This document shows positions 25,151-55,063 of a stretch of DNA of 64,000 bases, piece by piece. How positions within the stretch are numbered: position 1 is the first letter of the stretch; each line of letters opens with the position of its first letter. The position numbers and the translations under genes are program-made. The notes beneath the pieces were generated by a model. It did not search any database. It was not told the origin of the DNA and saw only the letters and a list, made by a program, of their open reading frames with translations. The stretch lies in the IMG/VR virus record IMGVR_UViG_3300035670_000008, positions 152,564 to 216,563 of that record, one strand, 5' to 3'.

Positions 25151-25807
25151 ATGCCTAACGAGTCCAACCCTTATAGCCCTATACTACCGCCGCCGCAACC
25201 AAGTATTTGGCCTGCTACCTCTGAGGCTGAGATTCTTCAGACTGTCGAGACTCGATTAACCTATACACCGATTATTGTTCAGTTTGTACCCCCAATTCTT
25301 GACGCTGACAGTTCACCTTATACGGACAAACAACGTAAGCGTCGCTACGCCCTTAGAATTACTACGCCACCTAGCAACCGACCAGGAGAGTGGCAGTATA
25401 TCCCTGACAGCTACTACTATGAAATCCCAGAGGACGGGCTGCTTAGATTGCAGCTGGTGCCTTCCGACCGGTATCTACCAATCGGGCGTTACGTTGTAGA
25501 ATACTTCCGTATAGGTAAGCGGCTGCCCGTGTTGACCCAGCGGTGGATTGTTCCGAAGCCGCCGCCACTAGGCACCTTTGCATTTAACTACGAACTTCAA
25601 CCACCGGTGTTACCAATAGATGTCTGGAAAGTCACTAGCGTCTCCGCAGGTACGGAGTGGGTATCTAACTACAATTCCCTGACTTGGGGTACACCTCCTG
25701 CTGTAGGAGAAGTTGTTAATGTCAAATATCAGCGAGCTCTCACTTTAGATAAACTTATAGACTACGGTATCAATAACTTTAAAGAAACGGATCGGGTGCG
25801 CTATTAA
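25151..25807 (+). CDS. Hypothetical Pro-rich protein
   Basis: 218-aa ORF ending 2 nt before the giant gene. Confidence 0.65.
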   Translation: MPNESNPYSPILPPPQPSIWPATSEAEILQTVETRLTYTPIIVQFVPPILDADSSPYTDKQRKRRYALRITTPPSNRPGEWQYIPDSYYYEIPEDGLLRLQLVPSDRYLPIGRYVVEYFRIGKRLPVLTQRWIVPKPPPLGTFAFNYELQPPVLPIDVWKVTSVSAGTEWVSNYNSLTWGTPPAVGEVVNVKYQRALTLDKLIDYGINNFKETDRVRY

Positions 25808-34800: not shown

Positions 34801-37800
34801 GTACTTGGTAAGAACAGTAATATCTTAGCTAGCCGGTTAGGTAAAGCTACCGGTGGGGTCTTCCGAGCCGGCGGCAAAGGCGCTAACGTTTTGCTTCTAA
34901 CGGGTCTAACTAACTTCTTACTGACAAATAACGTTACTGGCGCGTTACCTAAAACGGCTCTCCGGTCAGCTTACACCGCTTTGAACATTGGAAGAGAAGA
35001 AGACTTTGAGAACTACTACTCTAGCGGGGCTGCTGCCGCTTCTTTGGTTACTGGTGTAGTTACGCCCCCGGTCACTAATTGGATACATGGAAATTATAAG
35101 AGACAACTAACCGGTCTTTTAACGCCGGAGCTCAACACGATAGGCCCAGCTTCAGCTATACCAGTAGATGAGTCTCAACGAGCTATGGCATTGGTAACTA
35201 AACTTCAAGGAGACTTAGACTTCGTTGAAGGGCGAACCTCCATGAAACCGGTGAACACCACGGCTAAGATGGCGCGGTTGTTGGGCATTGCGGAAGACGC
35301 AGTTGTACAGACTAATTTAGAGGAAGAGTATCTTAACGTTTTAAGTAATAAACAGTTAGCACTACGCCATGCTAGAAGTTTAGTAGACGCCAATCTCCAA
35401 CATGGTTTTATCCACGAGGGACTGCGCTCTATTCGCGCGGTGGCTAGAGTATCTGGGCACATCGGAACCTTAGGGTTAGGTTACTTCCTTAAAGGGTTGT
35501 CTTCATCTAACTCAGTGCCTCTTTCTGTATTGGCGATGATTATGGGGGGTCTTGGTGGATTTGGATATCAGCATGTTAACGCCAAGACTGCTAATGACCG
35601 TAGTTGGGTAAATTACATGGGCGCCGGTCTAGCCGGCGGCTACGCGGCGGGGACCGCAGCTGGTTTAGTAACTAGTTTTGGTTCTGGTAATCTACCTAGC
35701 GTGCCGTTATCGAAATATCCGCAACGCTTGATGAACCTGTTCGCTCGGATAGTTAAAGCGATAGATAAGGGCGACGTGGATGACGCTATCTCTACAAAGG
35801 CTCTACCTAAGTGGCTTGACGACATTCAGGGTTTCTCCCAGAAGCTTCTACAAGACCCCAGAAGTGCCGGGCTTAGTGAGTCCGTGAACCTGAAGAGCGT
35901 CGGGACTAAAGTCGATTGGTTCAAACTAAGCAATAAAGTCTTGCCGGTAGCCGCGTTCTCTATAGACGTATTGAACCTTTACACCAGCGTTAACCAAATT
36001 AACAACCTTCAATATGGTAGGTCGCAGGCTCAATTCCAGCAGGCTTACAGCTCGTATCAATCTACAATATCCACTATTGCCTTTAGCGCTCTAATGGGTA
36101 TTGCGGCAAGGAACACTTCCTTCAGCCGGATTCTTGGCGGTACTCTCCAAGCCGGGCAGTTGGGGTATAAACGAGGATTGGATGAGTCAGATAACGCCTA
36201 CGCTGACGCAATGGTGGACAACGTTGCTTATCAAACCAGTAAGCGTAAGCAGACTATGCTAGCGCTTGGAGCAGGAGGATTATCCGCCCTTTCAGTAAGC
36301 ATCAGCGCTTTAAGAGCTAACCCTTCATTTGCGCAACGGGTGTTGCCCAAATCGTTAGTGGCTTTAGGTAGCCGTCCGCTGGCTCAATCTGCAGCTCAGC
36401 AGATAGATGACTTTGGTATGCCTGTTGTACAGACGGCCTTTACTGCTTACGGGCTGCACCGGGTCGCTAAACCCTATGAGCAGCGGTATGAGCACAGCTC
36501 GAACGTTAGCTACCAGATGGCGCAACGTCGGGGTGAGTTGATGTCTTTAGTGTTGTTCGCTACTGGCAGTGCGTTATTGGCTAGGAAGCCGTCTACGAAG
36601 CTTGGCGCGGCGGTTACGAAATACATCCCAGGTTTAGGAGCTATCGGGGCAGGGGCTCTAAAAGACCTCTATACGAAGGACTCGTTCTACCAGTACGAAG
36701 CAATGTTCTTGAAGTCTGGTATTACTAATGACTATGCCAAGAACATCATTGCTACGAAGGCGGCTGAAAGTACTGACGACAACCTAGGCATCACGCTTGG
36801 ATTAACCACTCTTGCATCGATTGGCTTATTGGTAGCTACTAAAGGTAAATATAAAGGCCCTATACTAGCAGCGCCGGCGGTTGTGGCGTCTGGTTTGGGC
36901 TACTACAACTACAGCAGCACCATACATGGAGAGATTAACGAGCGGAAGCAGTATGAAGAAACAGGCGGCTTAAAACCAGAAGAGGTAGCTGAGTACCAAG
37001 AGTGGCGGAGCAGTGGGGAGCTATACCCTTCCCGCTGGAAGAACACCCGCCAGGGCGTCAACTACCAGAAGTATAAGGAGGCTGAAAGACGCCGTATTAC
37101 TAACTTTAACCTTAACTACAACGCGCCAGTGAGACGTGGCTACGGCTTTACTCCAGCGCCGGTAGACGCCAAATCCATCCCTGACTTCGTCCTACGAGCA
37201 GCAGCGATGGAGTCCCACGCTAAAGCAATTGAAAACCACAAGGCAAACCCCGTGGTTCTCGGAGCTAGCGCGGCTGGATTAGGTTTAGCTACCTGGATTG
37301 TTGGTACCTCTCGGATACCCACCTTAAACGTAATCCCGGCGGCTGGGAAGCATTATCTATCTAGCTGGAAGACCGCCGTTCCGTTTGGCACCCACGTCGG
37401 TACCAATCTAATTGAACCAGTTATTACAGGAGTAGCAATTGCGGCAGAGCAGCGTAAGATTAACGACCTCTCGAAGGTACCGATTAGTGTAGGTATTGCT
37501 GGGGAGATGCAAGCGGTTAGACAGTCTGTGGACATCACGACGGCTCAAGATAAGATGACCTTCCTAGCTTTGATGTCCCAGCTACCGCTTAGCGGGGAGA
37601 CGACTCTAGGTAGTATCGTCCGGGGCGGTTTAGTCCACGGGATTGGACATGCAATCTTCGAGTCGAATATCGGCATGGTTAGAGAGCGGGAGTTTAAACA
37701 GCGGGTCAAAGTGCTAGCTGAAGCCCGGGCTAAAGGTGTCAAAGTTAATAGTGCTCTGCTCAGTAAAGCTGTTAAAGCCCAGGCTACCACGGATGAGGGG

Positions 37801-40800
37801 CACGCGATAGCTGCGACTTTAGGAATTGGACAGACGGCGACCAAGCTATTCATGGGCGGTAATGTCAACGCGGCTTCCTCTATTAATGCTTCGGTAGAGG
37901 GCGCGGTATCCTTCCTTGGAATTAAAGCAGTCATCAACCGAGCGATTGGTAAGCGTCGGTTTGATAACGTCGTACTGAACCGGTCTACTAGAGATGACGG
38001 GAGAGTTCTAGATTCAGAGCCCGTGGCTAACGTCGTTAAACAATCAGCAGGCCCGACTGGCTCGAAGAGTAGCTTCGAGGATGATTACTTAACCAACCCA
38101 TATATGTTGGAAGCCGGCGCTACGATTGGTGCCTACGCGCTTATCACTTTGGGTTCTAGTTACCTGGCGGCTAGAGCTACGAAGAAGGCAGCCTCTATTG
38201 CTTTAAACAAAGCCAAGCAACTGCTAGAAGAAAGGAAGCTCGCGGCTGAGCCTTCTGTTACGACGACAGCGGCGGAGCCAGCTGTTGCTGAGCCGTCTCC
38301 TTTGGCGTCTCCCGAACCCGCGGTTAGCGCAGATACCTCGGCTAAGGGAGTTTCTACAGTAATGGACTTATATGAGGAGACCGCTCCAAGTCCCCTTGCC
38401 TCAGCTGAACCACCAGTCGGTAAGCCTAGTTACAGCGCGGACACCTCAGGACAGGGTGTGTCGGCTGTGCTTGACCTGTATGAGTCTATTACTCCACAGA
38501 CTCCTGCTCCAGAGACAGTAGCTAAACCGATCGTTACTGCAGAGCCGCCGTCTACTTCTAGTCAGGACGTTATTAATAAGGTGACTAATCCCGAGCCGCC
38601 TACTCCTACACCAACTGTTACAGCTCCTCCATCTCCTGAACCGACAGGGCCTAGTAAGCTTGAGTCACGCAAACCACGCTTTGGTCAAATTGACCCTAAC
38701 TTAAAAGGTAATATATCAACTGGTAAGAAGCAGGCATTAACCGCCGGTAAATTCCTGTTAGGGACTTCAACTGATGACCATCTATCTAGTAGTCTTGTTT
38801 CATTGAATAGAGCTATTAACCAAGTTCAAAATGCTGGCTTTGCTAGTTTAGGCCCTGCAGGAGCCAGTCGTTACGGACAGTTAATGGGTGAGCGGCAGGC
38901 TATCTTATTGGAGCAGCGCCGTCGGCAGCAACAAGCTAGCCAACAGGTCATTGAAACTGTTGCTGCCGAACCAGAGATTACACCTAAACCTTTAGAGCAG
39001 CCTGCTCCGCCGCAGCCGACCAAGCCTATTCCTACTACTCCTAAAGAGCCAACTGTCGAGCCATCTTTGTTGGACACGACTAAAGCAGCTGACTATTTAC
39101 CAGTACCTATCTATGAATCGTTTACTGACACATCTTTCTTAAGTAGAACTTCTGGTAAACAAACTACTTTAGGCAGACAGAAGTTCCTTATGGCGGGTGG
39201 GTACATGAGTACGAATAGTTACTCTAATGTACCGGAGTTAGAGCGGGCTGGCGGAAAGGATAGTGCTGATATTAATAAAGGTGACCTAAGTATTAGAGTT
39301 AGTATAAAGGCACAGACTGTAAAAGACGGTAAACGTGTTGATATAGACAATCCTTATATCAACATACAACATATATGGAATATAGCCAACGATGAATACG
39401 GACGGGGTGGGGTCATTACCCGTGACTACATATTAGAAATAAACTCTTTTCCTGGGGCAACGGTAGAAGAGAAAGCTAAAAGTGCTTACGCTTACTTCGA
39501 GCAGCAGTACGCGCGCCGGATGCAGGAACTTCGTAGCTCCAATCCAGCAGCTATCGATAAATACATGGCGGATGCCGGCCACGGCGATTATCTTTCTTGG
39601 GATTATAACAACCGGCAGGGTGATGAAGGGTTCTTGTTTAAACATGAAATTAATCCTACAGGAGCAGTTGGTAAAGTTACACCTCCGGTAGAAAACCCTA
39701 CTCTACCTAAACCCCCACAACCACAACCAACAAAAACGTCGGATAGGACGGCATTACTAAATATATATGAAACATCCACTAGTGGTGTAGAAGGTTCTGG
39801 TAGTAGAGATTACGATTATACTCTCCCACGCGGTTATGGGATTACGTATGGTAATAAACCTAGTGGACTAGACAAGGACAAGTTTGTTGAACGTTTAGAT
39901 GTAGATTTTAAAGAAAGAGAAGGTGGTTATAGAAAAATAGACCTTTTAGGAACTAAGGTTGAGGCTAGAACTGCGGCTTTAGCATTAAAACCTATGGAGG
40001 TGTTTAATACTTCTGGTATTTACACACAAACCAAAAATGGTAAACAGCTTAAAGTTGCTTATGTCTCTACTATGTTAGGGATGGCTTCTGATGTCAGCGA
40101 AAAGGACGCTCGGAAGATGGTTTATCATAGGGATTATTTTGCTGAAATCAAGCCCGAACAAGATGAGCAAGTTGTTTTACGGCAACTGCAAGCTCAATAT
40201 GTTGAAGCAGTTGAGTGGGCTAAGATTAACGCTCCTGACCAAATTAAAGATGGGCATCTAGTCCCACGTCCTGAAGGGAAATTTGTTCCTATTGATTTAA
40301 GTAATGTAGGAGGTTTGCATACTACAATCCCACAGCAAGATGGTGGTTTCATCAAACCTGTTCCGTTACCAACTAGTGCGGAGCGTCAGGTCTTAAGTCA
40401 ACAGCGCGCCGACCGGGTGCGCCGTGGGCAAGCTAAAGGCATTGATTACCAAATGATGCTGATGGACATGGTCTATGGCAAGGCTAAAGAAAGTGTCACC
40501 GGCGTCATTAGCAAAGCTAAGGAGATTAGTCAATCCTTCGTATCTGGAGTCGGTCGAGCCGTCCGGGGTACAGCTAACCAAGCCTGGGACGGTTGGAGTA
40601 TCTTCGACCGATTAGAAGGCCTCGACGCTCGCTTTGGCAACCAAGGTATGGGTGGTGGGGCTGGATTCTGGACTCGCTTTGGTCAAAGCGCTAAGTACGA
40701 ACTTAGCGGCAGGGGGATCGTTGAAGGGGGTTTTGGTATCGGTCGAAATGCTCAAACCGGCAAGGTTGGTATCCAAGGTAAAGGCGGCGCGATGGCCCTT

Positions 40801-43800
40801 GCTGGCATGGGGCTACAACTAGCTGACGATATCCTGACGTTAGACTGGAGCCGCAAGAACTTTGCTAAGTCGTTAGGTACGGTAGCGAAGAATCAAGCCA
40901 CGTCGTTAGCTGCTGGGGTAGCCTTCGGGTTGGTGACAGCTGGGCTGGGGGCCCTAGCGTTGTCTTCTGTACCGGCGTTAGCTGCGCTGGGGATTGTGGG
41001 TAGCGCTGTGTTGATGGGCTATGGAATCTACTCGCTAGCTGACCAAGGCTTCAAGGTTGGTGGTAAAGCCTGGGAGAAATTCGTCCTGAAGCGGAAGCGC
41101 ACAGCAGAAGAGCAGAAGGTTTACGAGCAACAGAGCCAAGTTCTATCGATGGGCTTTGGAGTTGGGACTTTTGTTTACGCAGGCTACAACCAAATTAAGA
41201 GTCTTCAGGGCGCCCGTCGGGCGGCTAGCGTAGTCAACCAAGCACCGGTCGTTCCGACTGTTCCCGTTCGCCAGGCAGTAGATGTAATAGACGACGTAGC
41301 TCCGAGAACTCCTGTCAACCCAACTAGAAGCGGGTCGGTGCTGAAGACCGCGGGTAAAGCCGTCAAGGTAGCCAGCACAATGTACAGTGTCTATCAGATT
41401 GGTACCGGGCTACACCAAGCTTTCACTGGTAAGACTGAACAAGCAAAAGACCAAGGTCGTCGTCAAGCCGTTCGGGAAATCGGTGGATTGATTGGGATGC
41501 GAGCTGGTGCCAAGGTCGGGGGCTACGTCGGTCGTGCTGGCGGCACGGCTGTGACAGCTAACCCCACCGGGGCTATCGTTGGTGACGTCGCTGGCCAAGC
41601 GGTCGGTGGATATATTGGCTACCAAGGCGGCTCTAACATCGCTGAGCAGATGTACGACAACGCGATGGAGATGATGTATGGCAAGATGAACCAACGCCAG
41701 CGTCAAGAGGCAGTTGATAAGGAAGTCAAGCGCCGCTCAGCTGGCAGTCAATATAACTTGGAGGCTATCCAAGGTAAAGAACAGAAGGTCGCTAAACAGA
41801 TAGAACGCCCGCGGGCTTGGTGGCGGTCGGACGAGGAAGATACTCCCTGGTGGAAGAAACTACTGCAAACCATTGGCAAGGGTGTAGAAGCGTTAGGTAA
41901 CTTTCTAACTAGGACTAAGAACGCTGCCTTAGACGCTGCTGATGCTTTAAGTAATTGGGCAACAGGCGGCGTTCCACTTAGTTCTGACGCTTTAATCAGT
42001 GGTAATTTAAGAGCGGCTAACAGTCGGGGTACATCTATTATCCAGGCTGCTCAAATATTAGGCATTAATCCCTTAGACTTGGCCACTATTGTTGAATTTG
42101 AGTCAGACGGAAACCCCCATATTCGGGGAGGGGCTGGCGGTAACTATATTGGGTTGATACAGTTTGGACCTAACGAACGTAAGAAATATGGTTATCACTC
42201 CAAGATGACTTTTGAAGAGCAAATGTTAGGGCCCGTCGTTAACTACTTTAAAGACCGCTTTAAATCGGCTGGGATGTCGACGGAAGGGGCTTCGTTAGAG
42301 GATTTATATACCACAGTGTTAGCAGGTAATCCTAAGGCTAACCGAGGTTCTAGGGATGCTTTTGGTACTAGTCCGCGCTCAGGTGTTCGTAAGATGACGG
42401 CTCCGGGGGCCGACCGGGATATCGCTCTACAGAAGTACTTTATTGTTGATGGTACACTTAACGCCCCTACAGGGTTCCAAGTTCCTAGTGGTGCTCGTTG
42501 GGCTAGTTCGATGGGCGTAAGAGATGCCAAGACATTGGCTCAATTACCTCAACGAACGGGAGGTAATGCTTATGGAATGAGAATTCATCCTACTCAAGGT
42601 AGACGTAAACTTCACGCTGGGGAAGACTACGCATTTCCGATTGGAACTCCGTTATCGACAGCGACGCCGGCTGTGGTTGTGTTTGCTGGTATGTTAGGTA
42701 ATGCAGGCAACACTGTTGTTCTTAGACACTCAAACGGCACCTACACTCGTTCGTTACACATGGATAAGATTTCGGTCAAGGCAGGTGACGTCTTGATGCC
42801 CAACCAAATGTACGGCACGGTTGGCACTACTGGGGATTCAACAGGCCCTCACCTCCACTTTGAGGAAGGGTCGTGGGATAGTAAAACCAATAGGTTTAAA
42901 GCCAAGCCCCCAACTGACTTAGGCCGTAAGTCAATTCAGGTTGGAGGTAAAACAGTTAAGGTTCAGGCAACACCGCCGACTAGCCCACAGGATTACTTCA
43001 ACAAGGTTGCTCCTATTCAGTCTGGTCAAACCCAATCTCAACAGATTATTACCCGTACTGAGCGGAAGTCTACTAAAGTAGGCGGGGTTACTCACTATGC
43101 CTACACCAACACCACCCAGAAGCTAGTGACAATAGCTGACAGTCAAGTGATCGGTAAGCAAAAACAACAGCTGAACGAAACAACAGCTAAACAAGTCAAT
43201 AAGATGCTAGCTGAGTTGAAGGCTGCAACCGGCGTTGACCTTTGGATCCTCTCTGGATATCGCAGCGTTGAGTATCAGCAAGAGCTATGGAATAAGAAGA
43301 AAAGAGAAGGTAAGAGCGACGCGGTTATTGCTAAGTCATTAGCTATACCTGGCTTTAGTGAACACCATACTGGAGACGCTTTTGATATTTCGCTGCAGGG
43401 CCAAGCGAACCTAACTGCTGAGCAGTGGGCCAGTAATCCAAAGTTAAGGGAAGCGCGCGCTTGGTTAGATAAGAACCAATCTAAGTACGGATTTGAAACT
43501 TCTTTCTTACCAGGCAATAAAGAGAACGTTGTGTCTGAGCCTTGGCATTTACGGTATGTAGGCCCTGGCTCTGAGTACGCCCGTCAAATCAAAACTAACG
43601 TAACGACGAGTCAGCAGGTTATTAATCAAGTCCAAGGCGGAACGACCACCCAGCAGGTTGCGTTAAACCAACAGCAACTCACCCAAGGTATTGAAGCCAT
43701 CCGTAAAAAATACGGTCTACAGTCTATCTATGCCCAAACTAAAGGTGGGGTAACTGTAGGTACAGTTGATAAGAATAAACCAGCGGTGGTTTCTAGCGCT

Positions 43801-46641
43801 TCAATGGGTAAACTTCCCATTGCTTTGTTGGTTCCATTGGTGAATCAACGGCTTAAGTCGGGTGGTCAAGAACTTGATCGATTGATTAAGATCGACACTA
43901 AGTTGGTGTATGAACATGATGGAGTTCGTTCGGACAACGAGCTAGCCAAACTGACCGTCAAGAGAGGCTATACTTCTATCCGTCGGTTGACCCAGACGAT
44001 GTTAAAAGATTCCAGCAACACCGCCGCTAACATTTTAATTAAGGAAGTGTTGGGTGGGGATAAAGCGGCGACGCAGCTAGCTAAGCAGTACTACAAAGAT
44101 AACCAAATACAGATTGGTTACTACGGTGGTGACACTCGTAAGCGGATGGGCGGTACGTCAGCGGCTAAAGCCACCACCAAGTCTTTGTTCCAAGCTTGGA
44201 CAGAAATTCGACGGGGTAAAGGTGCTTACTTTGATGTAGCTAACCAAGCGCTGTCTGACCCTGGTCGTTTTAAACTACTAGGCGATACTTCCACAGCGTC
44301 TAAGATTGGAGTTACTTCCTCGGTATTAGGTAACGCCGGGACTTACTCCGGTGGTGAAATTTTAGTCTTTGACTTCGGCAGTAATAAAGACCACCGTGAC
44401 CCTAATAATCAGCGTCGTTTAGCTCAGGCAGCAGCTGAGGTCAACGCTTTGTTGGGTAAACGAACGACGGTGCAAGTAGCCAATCCATCTGCCCAGTATC
44501 AACAACAGCAGGCTCAACGGAATGTTAGCTACATTCCAGGGGTTGGCGCGGGTCGGTCGAGAATTGTAACCAGCCCCGCAAGTGGTGTAGTTACTAATAG
44601 AAATGACCCGGACAGCCGCGAGTTCGTAACGGGGAGTGATATTCAAATAGGCGGTATCCGTAACGGCGTGCCAATTTGGAATCCCATCCAAGGATTGACC
44701 CAGGTTAAGCCTAATAGCTTCCAAGGTCGAGGCAGAGGTAGAAGCGGAAAAGGTTGGGGTAACTTGACTCGCTACCGGATTGACTTAGGTAACAACCGAG
44801 TCGTAGAGATGTTGCTCGGTCACGGTGATCGCCCCTTTGAGGATTATATGGGTCAAGGCGGTATTGTACCATTCGCCTTACTTGGTTACCAAGGGGATAC
44901 AGGGCACGCAACAGGACCCCACGCTACTACTTCTTATAAACCGGTTAAGGGAACTAACGCGACTGCGGCTGACGCAAGATTAGTTGAACGCATGGTTCAG
45001 AATGCGTGGACCAGTAGAGGGTCTTGGGTTCGTGTCAACGGCGAGTGGCGTTTGGTTAAGTTGAACCAGGCCCAGCAGATGGGGTTACTTAATGGTACTC
45101 AACCTTCAGTTCAACCAAGTCAAACGGTTAAACCCCAACCAGTTAGTCAACCTGCTCGTAGCCAACAACAACTCAAGCAATCGTACCAACCTGCTGGTGA
45201 CTTCAAGCGAGTCAAAGCTAGTTACTACGGCGGTACCCAATTCCATGGTAAGCGAACGGCTTCAGGGGAAATCTACAACCAAAACGCGTTGACGGTAGCG
45301 GTTCCCCGGGATAAGCGGAATAGACCCATCATACCGTTTGGAACCGTCTTAGAAGTTATTAACCCAGCTAATGGCAAACGAGTCTTAGTTAAGGTTACTG
45401 ATACTGGTTCGTTTGGCAGTATGGGAAGAGGGTTAGACTTAAGCGTAGCCGCGGCTACAGCACTAGGTACGATTAAAGCTGGGGTGGCTAATGTTCAGTA
45501 TCGGATTGTCAAGCCTGTGGCTAACGCTAAACCACAAGAGCCAAAACTAGAGCTGCCTACTACTAAACCAAGTGATTGGGCTCCTCTTGTACCAAAGGCT
45601 GCGCCGCCGCCTGCTCCCAAACCTAAACCCAAGTTCAATATCTTTGACCCTAGAACCTGGCTAAGAAGCGAAGGGGTAAGACCTCAACAGACTTCTAACC
45701 CCGTAGCTACGATTAAATCTCCTGTCATAGAGGAACAGCAAAAAGGGGGTGATAACATGGTTCCTAGACAACGAATGGAGCCGGTGCTGGTCGCTGGGGA
45801 TTTATCTAAGCTTTCTGGTATTTTGCCTCCGGCAGATAAACTGCCTACGGCTAGTAACGTCTGGGGGATGCCTGGTCATCGGCCTGCGCCGACGGGTAAC
45901 TATCATGACTACGGCAAGCGCCCGCCGCAAAGAGAGGGCCCCATTTGGGGTCAGGCTGGTAGCAGACCGGAGCAGACCGGTAGCTACCAAGATTGGGAGC
46001 GGATACCCCAGCGTGACCGGACTACGCCGCCAGTACCTACGGTGCCGGGGCATCGTCCAGAGATATGGGATATTCTTCCCCCATTGGGGAATATTCCTGG
46101 AACGGTGGATATTCGTAACCCTAAAGCTAAGCCGACGATTCCGCCCAGTGAATGGGGAGTCGTTAAACCTAAGGCAAAGCCGAAAGTAAAAGCGACCCCC
46201 ACGCCTAGCCCGGCTCGTATTGAAGTGCCTATCGGAATGCCCAAAGCGGTGCTTGGACTAGCCGGTGTGCTAGCTAACGCAGTCGGGAAGAACTTTAACG
46301 CCGAGTTGGTGACGGAAGCCCAGGAGCTTTTGAATGATGCGGCGCAGGCAGCTGTGAGTTATGTAGAGCAAATTAAGGAGGCTAAGGCGGCGGCGATTCT
46401 TTCTTTAGAGCACCCACAGACGTTAGCTGGAGTTCGTCCGAGTAATCAACGTGGGCAGGAGGTTCGCACTAAGAAACAAGAGATAGTTGCTAGCTACGAA
46501 GACGGGAAGATTTATATTGGTCAGCAGATTCCTACTGAAGCAGTGCAGGCTCAGTTAGCCAACCGGGATATTAAGGTTCCGGTTCGTCCCGAGCACGAGC
46601 GAGCTGCCGCTCCACGGATGATGAATACGAAAGCAGACTAG
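25810..46641 (+). CDS. Giant (6943 aa) tape-measure-like/ejection protein with six C-terminal cell-wall-enzyme domains
   Basis: Uninterrupted ORF; long Ala/Gly-rich helical region with hydrophobic segments; C-terminal lysozyme-like, M23, VanY/M15B, beta-lactamase-like, second M23 and RlpA-DPBB motifs. Confidence 0.8.
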   Translation: MAIDYIDAVGGRLSVKLESSHLNESAGNMSIGGQVERTKEDPYGVVSYMHDTNRLARFVDGLRDIEVIQFAAPFNNIQRSVSPSPNPLSNMLEGAYNSAKWMQALFPSEVSMLMKTKQLKSLETDLTNFDSTVQNPIKLYEAREALLNNQIQAKYHKNKDGSFPEVTGAQLDRLQHSKLLEGLYSKEKQAQLQAEFKEKGFNVQAPTGKVQTTTAMFTDTSFLGISITGSGGALGSYEDYTLGFENPNIIRDLAYFRENKSTIDYYEREPVPGVTITGNLSIYKKRVEALREANEIQRILGKGKDGLFVYVASPSMDWNEQPREHNYRDTIQRKNVGAYIKELQKTGTQGILSLGIDKKRINIPAGEKTKLLQNAYIGDSRSGRRDHGNMQYINLRGTPKDRISKEAQEELARKGLLDKAVKGISTLSIGQYRIVGDESINQETTIDLNKVSPAYREAAEGIAQGSIGGKNFYQLRKDVAKEGIAGALLQEFYTPTFSDRQKRGWEQEGLLPNMPLSMPASFFRYFEPGTKTRIYTDRFKALTGYRPEGAQGYVLRTLDEKLSDPGLGNQINYMFRQRDLYEVGKGAVGTLAAGVGRFIDTATGFYTMQTIKARESGQLSGSLRKLYESRQRDPYEQTEKRGFFENLTTKAVAITGSTATAMASYFGVTHAYTMAKAAVEQVGVDYVLDSIASGKVGGASKLFLEQLLDESHSNLITGANIIYNAESGALRTIENTGKALDEYFDLSTRSSLKALQLDDELVDEVVKESDFIGGIRGKGIAAPTEQQAVLNLIGELDTSAAARDNTVAGLVTKKLEARLAEFAKRPGTATGAKPPAGEIRGWVTEIYKELGIHRDAGTIDLGRGVDHPTIAARVQQPAGFVNIASVRRMDTGNLHNMFIPLLDEVVFDKNNQQYRTAKENLLRLAKASPILSYKQTANNLSAASDLKIYNYGYERIRQLAEVFDELAEQLPANPLMWIKPIRQVFMANPLTGGQTRHSIEGGAETTLRYTFKDLIGPGFTGLINLQGQITRELVNINKVGLGKHLEGGFDLIKQSKELVQSQSQLVAIIQQSNSAQQAVEMLEGFNIGGNLTELGARKEFIRKQSRYDVLLRDRRRDYEELLKQEGGNPAFSGLRKGLLGIGTVLLVDRLFDTFVMRPQGVDLFDSILSDVIGSRSPAVEGREGDAAFQSLYDTEYSNALPNIVKYPSAAAGFFIGGHMFPSYEVAESSIYTAMRSKYGELGEAALSGTKFTLQAEGDRAIALGINKQIIKTKFGTAGALLGASAALIGSQLLANYVADVAKPAVRGFDNLASLATGVFTGQWGRWREPESGLDVDPVKGSAASVLAKLVHYSVRGQAKGYRKGGLVTAEQKTDTYLLGLTAQSMMQSDSKPPQLFYSFATQIASPFFQFASVGKVDPAKNTINLNAGLQLFPLLGAGLMLPSPLTPKVTYTSALPTRMVANYLKKYHEGVRYRYEPNTLGEIQEREAFHRMEEINKLSSMMLGGGVNLSLDTKPLVYLAMLGGLRDLSESSLAAFEQMQVNNRDLSPDKATKLYKELSNYETLFHAGRTGFNVLDTMSRAAYSLPMVMPNYLVKSATTLLGGAGRTQHILGPMARRASPYLLAFGILGASFRFNDKAMESELVTYADLQKLFKTGQYEGLNQKLIESQGINLTQTVIGSALLGAAISSSGAFESVRNFGAAYDRVQKITEQGGRAGYIDRQKHKLYSMWMEHLAEKGTVGLPLESGVDLVIESINTPSKASEAYEQISRRLVEPAEATLQTRLRDRQLIEAAREIDIPLVRTMPTRLGMLARRVAPLVVGAMVVSQMLATTDGFKQSPWMSLIRNLTDTGAGDLSAEQRAMLTKLGIKEPKYRPKDLGQSFRNIADYLVGAAMTPFGGNTFGLYQDNPNPFSPILGPLGVSLGSQDDVRPYLQSQSVAADISGSLYLLPAMSAGISEAMNLGPLLKYAGQLETHPKGSQIARALIRGAGLRTRAAKFKGGPSQREMRAASSPELQMALVRRYDRLRQLSWQTAGEHQWDVLAEFHRAGRILGNNQRGTIPGAEMNATRPATTMIYDTLGKLHLIPVLNDGTFITPRKNTETELLKFFRNLMSSGAGYGQGAAADFSADVTDTLIRRSQDRGGVPVLSFFSGLFQYAFNSFYDKNTEEIAADSNNVIGAGLMAGAAIALGASFVGTTFATGIQLVGALAALSDQGNISDVRSSIRDLRQGVKKRLRRSTFYIDQTNDRLVRPDGHNRIRALKDHNLTDEAVEQINQALTGQGRYGGYSPGNALETIIDADLRTTASKLVNTYHTGGGQTISTTVVEEVDALIKSLDTQLTVVVGGQQIHVGDLLTPTVAAEGATEAVVAHSVVKDKARLSTEIYEVLTSGKFKDTQQLEIERILLDHIDRGLAVTTADGRFEAAQATPNAYQPEAAVRAEQQAAAKKAAEQGVQTVEAYDPSVGYLRSKIQAKGYSGLMAEGAAGAMRAAGELINLKAYYEILSYTAAMGSSDVFDRRRSTQAAAQNTIQAFGMIIPMQYALKAAQASPGVAITAALTAAVIGGAALGNKQVRDTLGNIFKPVFSFGDKYVYKPAVQGLAGIYDAVTTAAPFIPQVLRPIAAVFDPIFSNMRSAAGNDPALSMLANFFVPEGVEQFYQRNAEIKGRTTPWGEAQEFYSNKELGQYYLSKMASRRRRGRSINAGIDSDLLHPFMQGKQVDIQYMNIFADRYLGGDGRIMEQFQTDRQMSNLLLMAIQRRQGMIDQYAEGSYMRKPYTKENVHHYFSTALALSKFSYAQTGSFIEAPINQAARGIGTTLGALQYVSELIPSEVGTKIKQGTVGAGIGFMVGAQLSHLGKDEGERRQYAAIGGSVGATVGGAGSVILAPSAQHLARRAFVALKKDKTVRAIAGGVATGAKYLTKQAGNALGMAGRWLNKAAPYLTFGALTTAAVYTNYDFLANLVDGDDRHKKGPLYNPLLKMGVSAGVGATTTLLGFTAVLGKNSNILASRLGKATGGVFRAGGKGANVLLLTGLTNFLLTNNVTGALPKTALRSAYTALNIGREEDFENYYSSGAAAASLVTGVVTPPVTNWIHGNYKRQLTGLLTPELNTIGPASAIPVDESQRAMALVTKLQGDLDFVEGRTSMKPVNTTAKMARLLGIAEDAVVQTNLEEEYLNVLSNKQLALRHARSLVDANLQHGFIHEGLRSIRAVARVSGHIGTLGLGYFLKGLSSSNSVPLSVLAMIMGGLGGFGYQHVNAKTANDRSWVNYMGAGLAGGYAAGTAAGLVTSFGSGNLPSVPLSKYPQRLMNLFARIVKAIDKGDVDDAISTKALPKWLDDIQGFSQKLLQDPRSAGLSESVNLKSVGTKVDWFKLSNKVLPVAAFSIDVLNLYTSVNQINNLQYGRSQAQFQQAYSSYQSTISTIAFSALMGIAARNTSFSRILGGTLQAGQLGYKRGLDESDNAYADAMVDNVAYQTSKRKQTMLALGAGGLSALSVSISALRANPSFAQRVLPKSLVALGSRPLAQSAAQQIDDFGMPVVQTAFTAYGLHRVAKPYEQRYEHSSNVSYQMAQRRGELMSLVLFATGSALLARKPSTKLGAAVTKYIPGLGAIGAGALKDLYTKDSFYQYEAMFLKSGITNDYAKNIIATKAAESTDDNLGITLGLTTLASIGLLVATKGKYKGPILAAPAVVASGLGYYNYSSTIHGEINERKQYEETGGLKPEEVAEYQEWRSSGELYPSRWKNTRQGVNYQKYKEAERRRITNFNLNYNAPVRRGYGFTPAPVDAKSIPDFVLRAAAMESHAKAIENHKANPVVLGASAAGLGLATWIVGTSRIPTLNVIPAAGKHYLSSWKTAVPFGTHVGTNLIEPVITGVAIAAEQRKINDLSKVPISVGIAGEMQAVRQSVDITTAQDKMTFLALMSQLPLSGETTLGSIVRGGLVHGIGHAIFESNIGMVREREFKQRVKVLAEARAKGVKVNSALLSKAVKAQATTDEGHAIAATLGIGQTATKLFMGGNVNAASSINASVEGAVSFLGIKAVINRAIGKRRFDNVVLNRSTRDDGRVLDSEPVANVVKQSAGPTGSKSSFEDDYLTNPYMLEAGATIGAYALITLGSSYLAARATKKAASIALNKAKQLLEERKLAAEPSVTTTAAEPAVAEPSPLASPEPAVSADTSAKGVSTVMDLYEETAPSPLASAEPPVGKPSYSADTSGQGVSAVLDLYESITPQTPAPETVAKPIVTAEPPSTSSQDVINKVTNPEPPTPTPTVTAPPSPEPTGPSKLESRKPRFGQIDPNLKGNISTGKKQALTAGKFLLGTSTDDHLSSSLVSLNRAINQVQNAGFASLGPAGASRYGQLMGERQAILLEQRRRQQQASQQVIETVAAEPEITPKPLEQPAPPQPTKPIPTTPKEPTVEPSLLDTTKAADYLPVPIYESFTDTSFLSRTSGKQTTLGRQKFLMAGGYMSTNSYSNVPELERAGGKDSADINKGDLSIRVSIKAQTVKDGKRVDIDNPYINIQHIWNIANDEYGRGGVITRDYILEINSFPGATVEEKAKSAYAYFEQQYARRMQELRSSNPAAIDKYMADAGHGDYLSWDYNNRQGDEGFLFKHEINPTGAVGKVTPPVENPTLPKPPQPQPTKTSDRTALLNIYETSTSGVEGSGSRDYDYTLPRGYGITYGNKPSGLDKDKFVERLDVDFKEREGGYRKIDLLGTKVEARTAALALKPMEVFNTSGIYTQTKNGKQLKVAYVSTMLGMASDVSEKDARKMVYHRDYFAEIKPEQDEQVVLRQLQAQYVEAVEWAKINAPDQIKDGHLVPRPEGKFVPIDLSNVGGLHTTIPQQDGGFIKPVPLPTSAERQVLSQQRADRVRRGQAKGIDYQMMLMDMVYGKAKESVTGVISKAKEISQSFVSGVGRAVRGTANQAWDGWSIFDRLEGLDARFGNQGMGGGAGFWTRFGQSAKYELSGRGIVEGGFGIGRNAQTGKVGIQGKGGAMALAGMGLQLADDILTLDWSRKNFAKSLGTVAKNQATSLAAGVAFGLVTAGLGALALSSVPALAALGIVGSAVLMGYGIYSLADQGFKVGGKAWEKFVLKRKRTAEEQKVYEQQSQVLSMGFGVGTFVYAGYNQIKSLQGARRAASVVNQAPVVPTVPVRQAVDVIDDVAPRTPVNPTRSGSVLKTAGKAVKVASTMYSVYQIGTGLHQAFTGKTEQAKDQGRRQAVREIGGLIGMRAGAKVGGYVGRAGGTAVTANPTGAIVGDVAGQAVGGYIGYQGGSNIAEQMYDNAMEMMYGKMNQRQRQEAVDKEVKRRSAGSQYNLEAIQGKEQKVAKQIERPRAWWRSDEEDTPWWKKLLQTIGKGVEALGNFLTRTKNAALDAADALSNWATGGVPLSSDALISGNLRAANSRGTSIIQAAQILGINPLDLATIVEFESDGNPHIRGGAGGNYIGLIQFGPNERKKYGYHSKMTFEEQMLGPVVNYFKDRFKSAGMSTEGASLEDLYTTVLAGNPKANRGSRDAFGTSPRSGVRKMTAPGADRDIALQKYFIVDGTLNAPTGFQVPSGARWASSMGVRDAKTLAQLPQRTGGNAYGMRIHPTQGRRKLHAGEDYAFPIGTPLSTATPAVVVFAGMLGNAGNTVVLRHSNGTYTRSLHMDKISVKAGDVLMPNQMYGTVGTTGDSTGPHLHFEEGSWDSKTNRFKAKPPTDLGRKSIQVGGKTVKVQATPPTSPQDYFNKVAPIQSGQTQSQQIITRTERKSTKVGGVTHYAYTNTTQKLVTIADSQVIGKQKQQLNETTAKQVNKMLAELKAATGVDLWILSGYRSVEYQQELWNKKKREGKSDAVIAKSLAIPGFSEHHTGDAFDISLQGQANLTAEQWASNPKLREARAWLDKNQSKYGFETSFLPGNKENVVSEPWHLRYVGPGSEYARQIKTNVTTSQQVINQVQGGTTTQQVALNQQQLTQGIEAIRKKYGLQSIYAQTKGGVTVGTVDKNKPAVVSSASMGKLPIALLVPLVNQRLKSGGQELDRLIKIDTKLVYEHDGVRSDNELAKLTVKRGYTSIRRLTQTMLKDSSNTAANILIKEVLGGDKAATQLAKQYYKDNQIQIGYYGGDTRKRMGGTSAAKATTKSLFQAWTEIRRGKGAYFDVANQALSDPGRFKLLGDTSTASKIGVTSSVLGNAGTYSGGEILVFDFGSNKDHRDPNNQRRLAQAAAEVNALLGKRTTVQVANPSAQYQQQQAQRNVSYIPGVGAGRSRIVTSPASGVVTNRNDPDSREFVTGSDIQIGGIRNGVPIWNPIQGLTQVKPNSFQGRGRGRSGKGWGNLTRYRIDLGNNRVVEMLLGHGDRPFEDYMGQGGIVPFALLGYQGDTGHATGPHATTSYKPVKGTNATAADARLVERMVQNAWTSRGSWVRVNGEWRLVKLNQAQQMGLLNGTQPSVQPSQTVKPQPVSQPARSQQQLKQSYQPAGDFKRVKASYYGGTQFHGKRTASGEIYNQNALTVAVPRDKRNRPIIPFGTVLEVINPANGKRVLVKVTDTGSFGSMGRGLDLSVAAATALGTIKAGVANVQYRIVKPVANAKPQEPKLELPTTKPSDWAPLVPKAAPPPAPKPKPKFNIFDPRTWLRSEGVRPQQTSNPVATIKSPVIEEQQKGGDNMVPRQRMEPVLVAGDLSKLSGILPPADKLPTASNVWGMPGHRPAPTGNYHDYGKRPPQREGPIWGQAGSRPEQTGSYQDWERIPQRDRTTPPVPTVPGHRPEIWDILPPLGNIPGTVDIRNPKAKPTIPPSEWGVVKPKAKPKVKATPTPSPARIEVPIGMPKAVLGLAGVLANAVGKNFNAELVTEAQELLNDAAQAAVSYVEQIKEAKAAAILSLEHPQTLAGVRPSNQRGQEVRTKKQEIVASYEDGKIYIGQQIPTEAVQAQLANRDIKVPVRPEHERAAAPRMMNTKAD
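42030..42430 (+). other. Lysozyme-like/lytic transglycosylase domain in the giant protein
   Basis: AAQILGINPLDLATIVEFES...YIGLIQFG...LEDLYTTVLAGNP (catalytic ES and GLxQ motifs). Confidence 0.7.
42560..42890 (+). other. Peptidase M23 domain in the giant protein
   Basis: GMRIHP...HAGED (HxxxD)...GNTVVLRH...LHM...STGPHLHFE (HxH). Confidence 0.9.
43150..43570 (+). other. VanY-like (M15B) D-Ala-D-Ala carboxypeptidase domain in the giant protein
   Basis: SGYRS..YQ, PGFSEHHTGDAFD (SxHxxGxAxD), EPWHLRYVG (ExxH). Confidence 0.9.
43700..44460 (+). other. Class A beta-lactamase-like/serine D,D-peptidase domain in the giant protein
   Basis: ASMGK (SxxK), DSSNTAAN (SxN), SKIG (KTG-like), in the correct order and spacing. 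Confidence 0.75.
44560..44960 (+). other. Second, divergent M23-like domain in the giant protein
   Basis: GSDI...GWGN...LLGH...LLGYQGDTGHATGPHAT; the first Zn-binding His and the last His appear substituted. Confidence 0.6.
45200..45510 (+). other. RlpA-like double-psi beta-barrel lytic transglycosylase domain in the giant protein
   Basis: ASYYG..FHGKRTASGE.YNQNALT.A...PFGT.LEV.N..NGK.VLVKVTDTG...RGLDLS.AAA..LG. Confidence 0.9.
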
Positions 46642-54671: not shown

Positions 54672-54721
54672 AGTTTAAACAGCTAAGTGTGTCACCTTAG
54701 TACTATGGCACATTTCTTAAG

Positions 54722-54751
54722 AAAAAGTGAAGGGGGCGCATAGGCACCCCC
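54722..54751 (-). terminator. Terminator ending the tmRNA/tRNA transcript
   Basis: Minus strand GGGGGTGC-CTAT-GCGCCCCC followed by TTCACTTTTT. Confidence 0.7.
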
Positions 54752-54910
54752 GGTGACCTAGTTGGGTAACAAGGTTAGGTCAGACCCCGTCATTCATACC
54801 GCAACAGCGGTACGTTTGAAAGCAACCACTTGGTTGGCATTTGTTGTTTGCTCATCCGAGCAGGCTTCATCGTAGTGCCATCCTTTACCAATCGAAACCG
54901 TTGCATCCCC
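54732..54910 (-). ncRNA. ssrA: tmRNA coding piece (5' half of a permuted two-piece tmRNA)
   Basis: Begins GGGGAUG-CAACGGUUUCGA (tmRNA 5' end and D-loop analogue); tag ORF 54838-54794 reads ANQVVAFKRTAVAV*; pairs with the piece at 55064 onward; 3' end approximate. Confidence 0.85.
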
Positions 54911-54911
54911 G

Positions 54912-54987: not shown

Positions 54988-54991
54988 AAGG

Positions 54992-55062: not shown

Positions 55063-55063
55063 T

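What the first reader, a model, noticed from the sequence alone, without database searches (positions are those of the whole stretch)
42030..45510. Six tandem peptidoglycan-active domains from five families on one virion protein
Seen in order: lysozyme-like, M23, VanY/M15B, beta-lactamase-like serine peptidase, divergent M23, RlpA-DPBB. Catalytic motifs look intact in all but the second M23. Known: virion-associated hydrolases usually carry one to three such domains; RlpA prefers peptide-denuded glycan; cyanobacterial peptidoglycan is thick and highly cross-linked. Inference: a drill head in which peptidases strip cross-links and stems so two glycan-cleaving domains can open the wall.
Basis: partly seen in the sequence, partly recalled or inferred. 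Interest (0 to 1): 0.7.

Follow-up and report, generated by a model that had tools for sequence, protein, structure and literature searches.

The report
Giant cyanophage protein with six wall-enzymes
A 6,943-residue protein encoded at the end of the tail genes of an uncultured 217-kb cyanobacterial virus ends in six cell-wall-processing domains in a row (five apparently active, one degenerate), two to three times more than any described virus-particle wall enzyme, and most likely serves to breach the host wall during infection.

Summary
Window 25810-46641 (+) is one ORF of 6,943 aa. Four pass Pfam's curated cut-offs and SLT is borderline. The second M23 is invisible to Pfam; linked homologues and a confident AlphaFold model that matches almost only M23 structures confirm it. 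Catalytic motifs are intact except in the second M23, which lacks two of three zinc ligands. The beta-lactamase-like domain has KIG in place of KTG and shows no omega-loop Glu, so it resembles a penicillin-binding DD-peptidase. The record is a cyanophage (tandem nblA; its sheath matches only cyanomyophages). Virion location is inferred, not shown. The gene closes the tail operon. The protein and both homologues have no cysteine. It has conserved membrane-like segments just upstream of the enzymes. Its degenerate M23 subtype occurs in tape-measure proteins that are also cysteine-free. Relatives carry different enzyme subsets, so the array is mosaic. Verdict: a new, extreme variant of a virion-associated lysin or ejection protein.

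The parts
25810..46641 (+). Giant ORF of 6,943 aa with no cysteine. Its ATG lies 2 nt after the stop of the upstream 218-aa ORF.
25151..25807 (+). 218-aa ORF coupled to the start of the giant gene. It is conserved (87% aa) at the same position in the relative. Function unknown.
32335..37308 (+). Five Ala/Gly-rich membrane-like segments (aa 2176-2199, 2549-2569, 3483-3501, 3658-3677, 3815-3833). Their positions are conserved in both homologues.
40339..41409 (+). Most conserved block of the protein (aa ~4844-5200; 86-89% identity in all three homologues over aa 5001-5200).
40900..41031 (+). Nearly invariant hydrophobic hairpin, aa 5031-5074, about 340 residues upstream of the enzyme array.
42037..42237 (+). 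Domain 1: SLT / lysozyme-like fold (aa 5410-5476; the domain probably extends to about aa 5530). E5431-S5432 and GLIQ motifs are present.
42610..42864 (+). Domain 2: M23 metallopeptidase (aa 5601-5685) with intact HxxxD, catalytic His and HxH. Nearest matches are ShyA/ShyC/MepM-type DD-endopeptidases.
43165..43563 (+). Domain 3: VanY / M15B zinc peptidase (aa 5786-5918) with intact SxHxxGxAxD and ExxH. Nearest matches are LdcB and VanXY carboxypeptidases.
43765..44409 (+). Domain 4: class-A-beta-lactamase-fold serine peptidase (Pfam match aa 5986-6136; by motif it extends to about aa 6200). It has SxxK, SxN and K-I-G, and no omega-loop Glu was seen.
44581..45024 (+). Domain 5: degenerate M23 (LytM-like) domain, aa ~6258-6405. 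It belongs to a subfamily found in tape-measure and tail-lysozyme proteins.
45211..45501 (+). Domain 6: RlpA-type double-psi beta-barrel (aa 6468-6564). It aligns to PA4485 and to the assayed 'endoglucanase' domain of the cyanophage A-1(L) hub gp15.
45502..46638 (+). Pro-rich C-terminal region with a hydrophobic segment and a conserved extreme C-terminus (about 50% identity in all homologues). Function unknown.

Best explanation
The giant protein is carried in the phage particle and expelled through the contractile tail at infection. It is an ejection protein with tape-measure-like architecture. A long N-terminal scaffold of about 5,000 aa is followed by conserved membrane-inserting segments. 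Then comes a C-terminal 'beads-on-a-string' module of wall enzymes that opens the thick, highly cross-linked cyanobacterial peptidoglycan locally so that the tube and DNA can pass.

Predicted activities within the module:
- Two glycan-strand cutters: the SLT-like domain and the RlpA-like DPBB.
- One cross-link-cutting zinc DD-endopeptidase: M23.
- One zinc carboxypeptidase-type domain: VanY/LdcB-like.
- One penicillin-binding-type serine DD-carboxy/endopeptidase: class A fold, PBP-A-like.
- One catalytically degenerate LytM domain, likely to bind peptidoglycan or a partner and not to cut.

What is shown: domain identity, order, motif integrity, mosaic inheritance, operon position and absence of cysteine. 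What is inferred: virion packaging, ejection and the individual bond specificities.
For: Domains and motifs.

Gene context:
- The gene is the last one of the co-directional tail operon (sheath, tube, baseplate wedge, collagen-like fibre) and is start-coupled to the upstream ORF.
- The same flanking genes occur in two relatives.

Cysteine avoidance:
- There are 0 Cys in 6,943, 6,860 and 7,866 aa of the three homologues, against 1.19% Cys in the genome's other ORFs.
- The 39 other proteins with the same M23 subtype hold 4 Cys in 37,648 aa.
- Two of those proteins carry the Pfam tape-measure domain TMP_3 and one carries Phage_lysozyme2.
- Ten of the 18 long ones have Ala/Gly-rich hydrophobic segments upstream of the M23 domain, as the giant protein does.

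Precedents:
- The SLT+M23 pair aligns in one piece with the SP-beta virion lysin CwlP/YomI.
- The DPBB matches the assayed lytic domain of the cyanomyophage A-1(L) hub.
- Cyanopodophage A4 ejection protein gp28 carries LT+M23.
- A related Microcoleus myophage keeps beta-lactamase-family, amidase and two M23 genes inside its tail module.
Against: - There is no proteomic or structural evidence that the protein is in the particle.
- The N-terminal ~5,400 aa match no family, phage record or structure.
- No tape-measure or other virion domain is detected in the protein.
- No separate endolysin was recognised in the 216-kb record, so a role in lysis cannot be excluded.
- Six folded domains are hard to fit in a tail lumen.
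- The structure of the beta-lactamase-like domain could not be modelled (pLDDT 34.9). Its KTG motif is K-I-G.
Confidence: 0.6

Rival explanations
1. It is the true tape-measure protein of the tail. The N-terminal part sets the tail length and the C-terminal enzymes sit at the tail tip, as in SP-beta CwlP/YomI or T5 pb2.
For: - The protein shows tape-measure-like traits: no Cys, about 20% Ala+Gly, and hydrophobic segments ahead of the C-terminal hydrolases.
- Its M23 subtype is found in TMP_3-containing proteins.
- PHROG tape-measure families match its M23 and VanY domains.
- The length of the N-terminal 4,300 aa is conserved among homologues although identity is only about 47%.
- No other ORF of the tail module was positively identified as the tape measure.
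- The 1,111-aa ORF after the tube gives weak baseplate-hub (GpP-like) leads in the ESM Atlas and no tape-measure leads.
Against: - The gene lies after the fibre genes, not between the tube and baseplate genes.
- No Pfam tape-measure domain was found.
- At about 1.5 A per residue (general knowledge), more than 5,000 residues would give a contractile tail of about 0.8-1 um, far beyond described cyanomyophages. Examples are 104.5 nm for A-1(L) and about 418 nm cited as the longest for isolated cyanomyoviruses (abstract listed).
- A 1,111-aa ORF with a 623-aa homologue in the Microcoleus phage sits in the canonical position.
Confidence: 0.2
2. The array, or a processed C-terminal fragment of it, is the phage's lysis enzyme and acts from within at the end of infection. 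Alternatively it serves both entry and exit.
For: The only SLT, M23 and VanY matches in the 216-kb record are inside this ORF. No T4-type lysozyme, Amidase_2, Amidase_3, GH25 or NlpC/P60 was found anywhere. The GH19 and GH108 searches were uninformative because their controls were silent.
Against: - Endolysins are small and are not fused to more than 5,000 aa of scaffold with membrane segments.
- The gene is in the tail operon.
- The enzyme modules are related to tape-measure and hub lysins.
- The record is 96% complete, not 100%, and only eight endolysin families were tested.
Confidence: 0.1
3. It is a 'polyvalent protein' in the sense of Iyer et al. 2017: a multi-effector polypeptide injected with the DNA, whose unannotated N-terminal 5,400 aa hold anti-defence or host-takeover modules. 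Wall breaching would be only one of its jobs.
For: - Polyvalent proteins can carry lysozyme and DD-peptidase domains (PMC5512222).
- The same genome has two more giant ORFs with helicase/kinase-like and PLD-like domains. One of them is also Cys-free.
- The homologue P0003 has a SprT-like zincin of the kind proposed to self-process such proteins.
- There are weak ESM Atlas leads to LPD14, LPD22 and PT-TG clusters (score 0.74-0.79, below significance).
Against: Every recognised domain targets peptidoglycan, so there is no mix of disparate activities. No MuF, LPD or nucleic-acid-directed domain was detected by Pfam. The Atlas scores are in the range that shuffled sequences reach.
Confidence: 0.1

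Closest known systems
Bacillus prophage SP-beta CwlP (YomI), 2,285 aa, a virion/tape-measure-type lysin
   Same: A long protein with a lysozyme-like domain followed by an M23 DD-endopeptidase near the C-terminus. It is the best phage-database match to aa 5381-5685, aligned in one 305-aa piece at 26% identity, E 1e-9. A 2017 review calls it the largest known virion lysin at 252 kDa, and one of five with two lytic domains (PMC5380687).
   Different: It has two lytic domains, not six, and is a third of the length. Its host is Gram-positive and it is a siphovirus. It has no serine peptidase, VanY or DPBB domain.
Anabaena myophage A-1(L) baseplate hub gp15 (PDB 8KEA)
   Same: A cyanomyophage virion protein with three wall-directed domains: lysozyme, an 'endoglucanase' that is a DPBB, and a peptidase. 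Two of them were shown to lyse Anabaena cells (PMC10966104). Its DPBB aligns with aa 6469-6566 at E 3.4e-8.
   Different: It is an 899-aa hub with a barrel domain and sits in the baseplate. The giant protein has no hub domain, twice as many enzyme domains, membrane-like segments, and a position after the fibre genes.
Cyanopodophage A4 ejection protein gp28 (PDB 9K2V), with T7 gp16-type ejection proteins
   Same: A capsid-packaged, ejected protein of a cyanophage that carries a lytic transglycosylase plus M23 (PMC12002296). 9k2v appears among the structural matches of the degenerate M23 model.
   Different: It comes from a podovirus, has about 900 aa and two enzyme domains. No sequence relationship was found outside the M23 fold.
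Phage T5 pb2 and phiKZ gp181 (tail-internal proteins with C-terminal muralytic domains)
   Same: The logic is the same: a long scaffold, hydrophobic or fusogenic segments, then a C-terminal wall hydrolase. This rests on my own knowledge; both are cited in the review read.
   Different: Each has a single lytic domain. No homology was tested or found here.
Cyanobacterial PBP-A (Thermosynechococcus), a class-A-beta-lactamase-like DD-peptidase
   Same: It has the class A fold motifs SxxK and SxN but lacks the omega-loop glutamate, and it has DD-carboxypeptidase plus DD-endopeptidase activity on peptidoglycan (PMC11189452). Domain 4 has S5998xxK6001 and S6068xN6070, and no Glu in the expected region.
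   Different: Domain 4 is very divergent: 33-34 bits to the class A models, and no relative found by word-based, tblastn or pattern searches. It has K-I-G in place of K-T/S-G. Direct similarity to PBP-A was not tested.
Degenerate LytM factors EnvC, NlpD and DipM
   Same: These have the M23 fold with lost zinc ligands. The DipM LytM domain is among the structural matches.
   Different: Here the degenerate domain belongs to a phage tail or tape-measure M23 subfamily. An amidase-activating role is only a hypothesis.

Membership tests
Virion-associated peptidoglycan hydrolase (VAL/VAPGH) | Contains peptidoglycan-cleaving domain(s) with intact catalytic residues | tested here: met
   Five of the six domains keep their family motifs.
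Virion-associated peptidoglycan hydrolase (VAL/VAPGH) | Encoded within the structural (late) gene module | tested here: met
   It is the last gene of the sheath-to-fibre operon on the same strand and is start-coupled to the upstream ORF. Synteny is conserved in relatives.
Virion-associated peptidoglycan hydrolase (VAL/VAPGH) | Physically present in the virus particle | not testable with these tools
   The phage is an uncultured metagenomic record and no proteome exists.
Virion-associated peptidoglycan hydrolase (VAL/VAPGH) | Muralytic activity on host sacculi | not testable with these tools
   This needs expression and zymogram or muropeptide analysis.
Tape-measure protein | Gene lies between the tail tube/chaperone genes and the baseplate genes | tested here: not met
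   The gene follows the fibre genes. A 1,111-aa ORF occupies the position after the tube.
Tape-measure protein | Recognisable tape-measure domain (Pfam TMP_2, TMP_3 or PhageMin_Tail) | tested here: not met
   No such hit at E<=0.1 over the whole protein.
Tape-measure protein | Long, Cys-poor, Ala/Gly-rich chain with hydrophobic segments and optional C-terminal hydrolase | tested here: met
   It has 0 Cys, 20.2% Ala+Gly and six hydrophobic segments upstream of the enzymes. TMP_3 proteins with the same M23 subtype share these traits.
Tape-measure protein | Protein length proportional to tail length | not testable with these tools
   No micrograph of the phage exists.
Polyvalent proteins (Iyer et al. 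2017) | Several domains of disparate biochemical activity (nucleic-acid, protein, nucleotide and wall targets) in one polypeptide | tested here: not met
   All recognised domains act on peptidoglycan. The N-terminal 5,400 aa are unannotated.
Peptidase M23 (first copy, aa 5601-5685) | HxxxD and HxH zinc/catalytic motifs plus the mid-domain catalytic His; Pfam score above cut-off | tested here: met
   H5602/D5606, H5650 and H5681/H5683 are present; 73 bits against a cut-off of 28.7.
Peptidase M23 (second copy, aa ~6258-6405) | M23 fold | tested here: met
   39 of 41 family members hit Pfam M23. The AlphaFold model has pLDDT 90.8, and 46 of its 50 best Foldseek matches are M23 or M23-containing chains, the best-ranked at probability 1.00.
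Peptidase M23 (second copy, aa ~6258-6405) | Complete zinc-ligand set (H and D of HxxxD, second H of HxH) | tested here: not met
   V6273 replaces the His and T6373 replaces the second His. The subfamily's alternative H/D four residues on is S6375 here. Only D6277, H6338 and H6371 are kept.
Peptidase M15B (VanY/LdcB) | SxHxxGxAxD and ExxH motifs; Pfam score above cut-off | tested here: met
   S5850/H5852/D5859 and E5910/H5913 are present; 107 bits against a cut-off of 25. It falls below the NCBIfam equivalog cut-offs for VanXY and LdcB, so the exact specificity is open.
Class A beta-lactamase / PBP-A-like serine DD-peptidase | SxxK, SxN and KTG triad at class A spacing | tested here: inconclusive
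   SxxK (5998-6001) and SxN (6068-6070) align to S70xxK73 and S130xN132 of class A enzymes. The third motif is K6165-I-G, 167 residues after the Ser. It was read by eye only, because the structure model failed.
Class A beta-lactamase (true beta-lactamase) | Omega-loop Glu166 and a score above the NCBIfam class A cut-off | tested here: not met
   33 bits against a cut-off of 200. No Glu is seen between aa 6089 and 6132. It should not be filed as a resistance enzyme.
RlpA-type lytic transglycosylase | DPBB_1 domain with the conserved Asp of the D-x-G motif | tested here: met
   50.7 bits against a cut-off of 28.8. D6531 aligns with the Asp of the 'NDRGP' motif in PA4485.
RlpA-type lytic transglycosylase | Full RlpA architecture (TIGR00413 cut-off, SPOR domain) | tested here: not met
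   TIGR00413 scores 75.6 against a cut-off of 82.15, and no SPOR domain was found. Only the catalytic DPBB is shared.
SLT (family 1 lytic transglycosylase / lysozyme-like) | Pfam score above cut-off, with catalytic Glu-Ser and GLxQ motifs | tested here: inconclusive
   Scores are 18.6, 21.7 and 22.6 bits against a cut-off of 21.3, depending on context. E5431-S5432 and GLIQ are present. There was no PDB sequence hit, and a profile comparison with a Phage_lysozyme2 domain was not significant.

The most novel reading that the evidence does not exclude
The array could be a self-contained wall-dismantling machine with two features not described for any virus particle.

1. It would contain a penicillin-binding-type serine DD-peptidase delivered by the virion. 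If so, entry of this phage would be sensitive to beta-lactams.
2. It would contain a degenerate LytM domain inherited as one cassette with the RlpA-like DPBB (78-92% identity to the relative). This domain would recruit or activate a host periplasmic amidase, using EnvC/NlpD logic, to produce the peptide-free glycan that RlpA-type enzymes prefer. That would make up for the lack of any amidase in the array.
Probability: 0.12. Interest if true: 0.8.

Novelty: new variant of a known kind. Interest (0 to 1): 0.6.

Why it matters
A 2017 review states that most virion-borne wall enzymes have one lytic domain, that only five were known with two, and that the largest was 252 kDa (PMC5380687). The richest cyanophage case found here has three (A-1(L) hub). 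A protein of about 760 kDa with five apparently active domains plus one degenerate domain, from five families, is an extreme of that design.

Three points follow:
- It suggests how large phages cope with the thick, highly cross-linked walls of (probably filamentous) cyanobacteria.
- It offers a natural set of compatible, cysteine-free lytic modules against cyanobacterial peptidoglycan. These could serve bloom-control enzymology and studies of domain synergy.
- The mosaic differences among three otherwise syntenic phages give a ready-made comparison of which enzyme combinations are sufficient.

It also puts a class-A-beta-lactamase-fold domain in a virion-entry context. That matters for how such hits in viromes are read: as wall peptidases, not as resistance genes.

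Tried and rejected
1. Close or distant DNA and protein matches of the giant protein in 50,697 phage records: none for aa 1-3000, none for the DNA, none for the beta-lactamase-like piece.
2. Word-indexed search of 5.8 billion proteins with aa 1-900 and with the beta-lactamase-like piece: nothing. Only two giant homologues exist in it.
3. Pattern scans for relatives: one viral contig, one metagenome contig, and no bacterial genome, so no prophage-based host assignment. The alignment of the M23 subfamily was too variable for a genome scan.
4. Single-sequence AlphaFold of the beta-lactamase-like domain failed (pLDDT 34.9). Its third motif and omega loop were read by eye only.
5. Pfam, PHROGs and PDB searches of the N-terminal 5,200 aa and of the neighbouring tail ORFs gave nothing useful. 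The ESM Atlas leads for aa 1-900 were below significance.
6. A profile comparison of the SLT-like domain with a Phage_lysozyme2 domain was not significant.
7. The other two giant ORFs of the genome are not paralogues, and the giant protein has no internal repeats.
8. Assembly chimera rejected.
9. True beta-lactamase (resistance) reading rejected.
Full report
**What is there**

The window is the last 64 kb of a 216,563-bp IMG/VR virus record rated 96% complete. Positions 25810-46641 (+) are a single ORF of 6,943 codons.

Pfam on the C-terminal 1,743 aa gives the following matches:

| Domain | Residues | Score (bits) | Curated cut-off |
|---|---|---|---|
| SLT | 5410-5476 | 18.6 | 21.3 |
| Peptidase_M23 | 5601-5685 | 73 | 28.7 |
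| VanY | 5786-5918 | 107 | 25 |
| Beta-lactamase2 | 5986-6136 | 34.3 | 22 |
| DPBB_1 | 6468-6564 | 50.7 | 28.8 |

- Scanned alone or in six frames, the SLT match reaches 21.7 and 22.6 bits.
- PDB sequence searches agree for M23, VanY/LdcB and DPBB.
- For the serine domain, PDB sequences give weak matches to class A beta-lactamases (E 0.002). These align S5998-x-x-K6001 to Ser70/Lys73 and S6068-x-N6070 to the SDN loop.
- The 5.7 kb around the array lies in single contigs with no differences in three sequencing runs of a subsurface/soil metagenome study. The fusion is therefore real and not an assembly artefact.

**The sixth domain**

Pfam sees nothing between the serine domain and the DPBB. A pairwise BLAST against the first M23 finds only the G-x-TG-x-(S/A)TGPH stretch.

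- An exhaustive HMMER search of 1.84 billion representatives with aa 6215-6435 found 41 proteins. Scanned one by one, 39 of the 41 match Pfam Peptidase_M23, and only the window's protein and its nearest homologue do not.
- With that alignment, AlphaFold gave a confident model (pLDDT 90.8, pTM 0.87).
- Forty-six of its 50 best Foldseek matches in the PDB are M23 enzymes or M23-containing virion proteins, the best-ranked at probability 1.00. They include NMB0315, Csd1/Csd2, EnpA, ShyA, lysostaphin, LytM, the DipM LytM domain, phi29 gp13 and the cyanophage A4 pre-ejectosome. The other four are gyrase B rows at probability 0.13.
- The domain is thus a genuine but degenerate M23. The His of HxxxD is Val (V6273 ... 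D6277). HxH is H6371-A-T6373. The His/Asp that the rest of the subfamily has four residues further on is Ser6375 here.
- By the established zinc-ligand scheme of LytM-type enzymes (my knowledge), two of three ligands are missing.

**Catalytic motifs in the other five domains (motif definitions from general knowledge)**

- SLT-like: E5431-S5432 and GLIQ.
- M23-1: H5602/D5606, H5650, H5681/H5683.
- VanY: S5850-x-H5852-x-x-G-x-A-x-D5859 and E5910-x-x-H5913.
- Serine domain: SxxK, SxN and K6165-I-G6167 at class A spacing. No Glu appears where the omega-loop Glu166 would lie.
- DPBB: D6531 aligned to the Asp of 'NDRGP' in PA4485.

NCBIfam places M23-1 nearest the ShyA/ShyC/MepM DD-endopeptidases. 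It places the M15 domain nearest VanXY/LdcB carboxypeptidases and the DPBB nearest RlpA (75.6 bits against a cut-off of 82.15). The serine domain scores far below the class A beta-lactamase cut-off (33 against 200). The serine domain is therefore best read as a penicillin-binding-type DD-peptidase. It resembles cyanobacterial PBP-A, which lacks the omega-loop Glu and has DD-carboxy- and endopeptidase activity (PMC11189452). It should not be read as a resistance enzyme. Its structure could not be modelled without homologues.

**What the protein and the phage are**

- Upstream on the same strand lie a tail sheath, a tube homologue, a gp6/J-like baseplate wedge and a collagen-like fibre.
- The giant gene starts 2 nt after the stop of a 218-aa ORF. 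It is followed by convergently transcribed genes.
- The sheath matches only cyanophages: the Ma-LMM01 group and Microcoleus phage My-WqHQDG.
- The genome carries two tandem NblA domains. NblA is a cyanobacterial/cyanophage marker by my knowledge, and only Synechococcus rang among the control genomes. The cyanobacterial host claim is therefore well supported. The exact host is unknown.
- The N-terminal ~5,400 aa match no Pfam or PHROG family, phage record or large-database protein.

Four features point to an ejected, tape-measure-like protein:

1. There is no cysteine in 6,943 aa, nor in the 6,860- and 7,866-aa homologues. The genome's other ORFs hold 1.19% Cys, which predicts about 83 Cys for a protein of this size.
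2. Six Ala/Gly-rich hydrophobic segments are conserved in position. The last is a nearly invariant hairpin at aa 5031-5074, inside the best-conserved block, just before the enzymes.
3. The 39 other proteins with the same M23 subtype hold 4 Cys in 37,648 aa. Ten of the 18 long ones have hydrophobic segments upstream of the M23. Two carry the Pfam tape-measure domain TMP_3 and one carries Phage_lysozyme2.
4. The SLT+M23 pair aligns in one piece with SP-beta CwlP/YomI.

**Comparative picture**

Only two giant homologues were found, in syntenic contexts.

- The N-terminal 4,300 aa are about 47% identical and colinear. The C-terminal cassettes are 42-93% identical and differ in content.
- P0002 has SLT, M23, VanY and DPBB, but neither the serine domain nor the degenerate M23.
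- P0003 has a lysozyme-like domain, the degenerate M23, DPBB and an extra SprT-like zincin.
- At DNA level the shared cassettes are 79-88% identical, against 64-68% in the N-terminal part.
- The six-domain set is thus specific to this phage and was assembled by cassette exchange. The serine domain has no detectable relative anywhere.
- In the related Microcoleus myophage, a beta-lactamase-family protein (with STIK, SNN and KSG motifs), an amidase and two M23 proteins are separate genes inside the tail module. Serine and metallo wall peptidases in tail modules therefore recur in this phage group.

**Mechanism and its limits**

The most likely reading is local wall breaching during entry by a virion-delivered protein.

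- Cyanophage precedents are the A-1(L) hub gp15, with lysozyme, DPBB 'endoglucanase' and peptidase domains, two of them shown to be lytic (PMC10966104), and the A4 ejection protein gp28 with LT+M23 (PMC12002296).
- A 2017 review states that most virion lysins have one lytic domain, that five have two, and that the largest is 252 kDa (PMC5380687).
M23 and perhaps the serine domain can cut cross-links. The VanY/LdcB-type domain is a trimming carboxypeptidase by its nearest relatives.
- Peptide-free glycan, the substrate reported as preferred by RlpA (my knowledge), requires an amidase. The array and the genome lack one.
- Relatives manage with three or four domains.

An alternative role cannot be excluded. 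No separate endolysin was recognised among eight families searched in the record, so a contribution to lysis remains possible. The true tape-measure reading is weakened by the gene's position, by the lack of a tape-measure domain and by the implied tail of about 1 um. It is not refuted, because no other ORF was positively identified as the ruler.

**Verdict**

The feature is a new and extreme variant of a known kind, a virion-associated lysin or ejection protein. It sits on an otherwise orphan family of giant cysteine-free proteins. Interest is 0.6.

Noticed in passing
window 54794-55116 (-): Rfam's permuted tmRNA model (RF04321) scores 86.8 bits against a gathering score of 47. ARAGORN also calls a permuted tmRNA with a tag peptide at 54703-55156. 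tRNA-Met (54912-54987) and tRNA-Trp (54990-55062) lie inside it. This may be a phage-encoded two-piece tmRNA.
   Followed up: partly
outside the window: G000:C1:103066-115785 (-) and G000:C1:126233-141571 (-) (loci L010, L011): The genome has two further giant ORFs. One has 4,239 aa, with an AAA_33 kinase-like domain, a RecD/PIF1-like helicase and 57 Cys. The other has 5,112 aa, with only weak PLD-like and XendoU-like hits and 0 Cys. The three giant ORFs take about 23% of the genome and are not paralogues.
   Followed up: partly
outside the window: G000:C1:75983-76297 (-) (loci L012, L013): Two tandem NblA (phycobilisome degradation) domains lie in one 117-codon frame region, both above the Pfam cut-off. 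This marks the record as a cyanophage.
   Followed up: partly
whole record G000: No T4-type lysozyme, Amidase_2, Amidase_3, GH25 or NlpC/P60 domain occurs anywhere in the record. The only SLT, M23 and VanY hits lie inside the giant ORF, so no separate endolysin is recognisable.
   Followed up: partly
proteins P0004-P0042 (relatives of aa 6258-6405): The M23 subfamily has lost the HxxxD histidine and has PHVTTH/D in place of PHxH. It sits in proteins that are almost completely cysteine-free (4 Cys in 37,648 aa). Some of them carry the TMP_3 tape-measure domain.
   Followed up: partly
L008 (Microcoleus phage My-WqHQDG, OR578706.1) 24701-30342: The tail module of this related cyanomyophage carries separate genes annotated as beta-lactamase-family protein, N-acetylmuramoyl-L-alanine amidase, LytH-type endopeptidase and M23 peptidase, between the tube and the baseplate genes.
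   Followed up: partly
P0003 aa ~7283-7346 (on IMGVR_UViG_3300047551_002099; loci L002, L003): The 7,866-aa homologue has a 600-aa insert after the DPBB with a SprT-like zincin domain (29.8 bits against a cut-off of 25.6). It is possibly a self-processing peptidase.
   Followed up: no
window 23333-25114 (+): A 593-aa ORF between the fibre genes and the giant gene shows partial PHROG similarity to a 'terminase large subunit' family (profile positions 581-833 of 940, E 2e-17). This is an odd placement inside a tail module.
   Followed up: no
window 4757-8092 (+): The 1,111-aa ORF right after the tube gene has no Pfam or PDB match. The ESM Atlas gives baseplate-hub (GpP/Gp44-like) leads for it, so the phage's tape measure is not identified.
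   Followed up: partly
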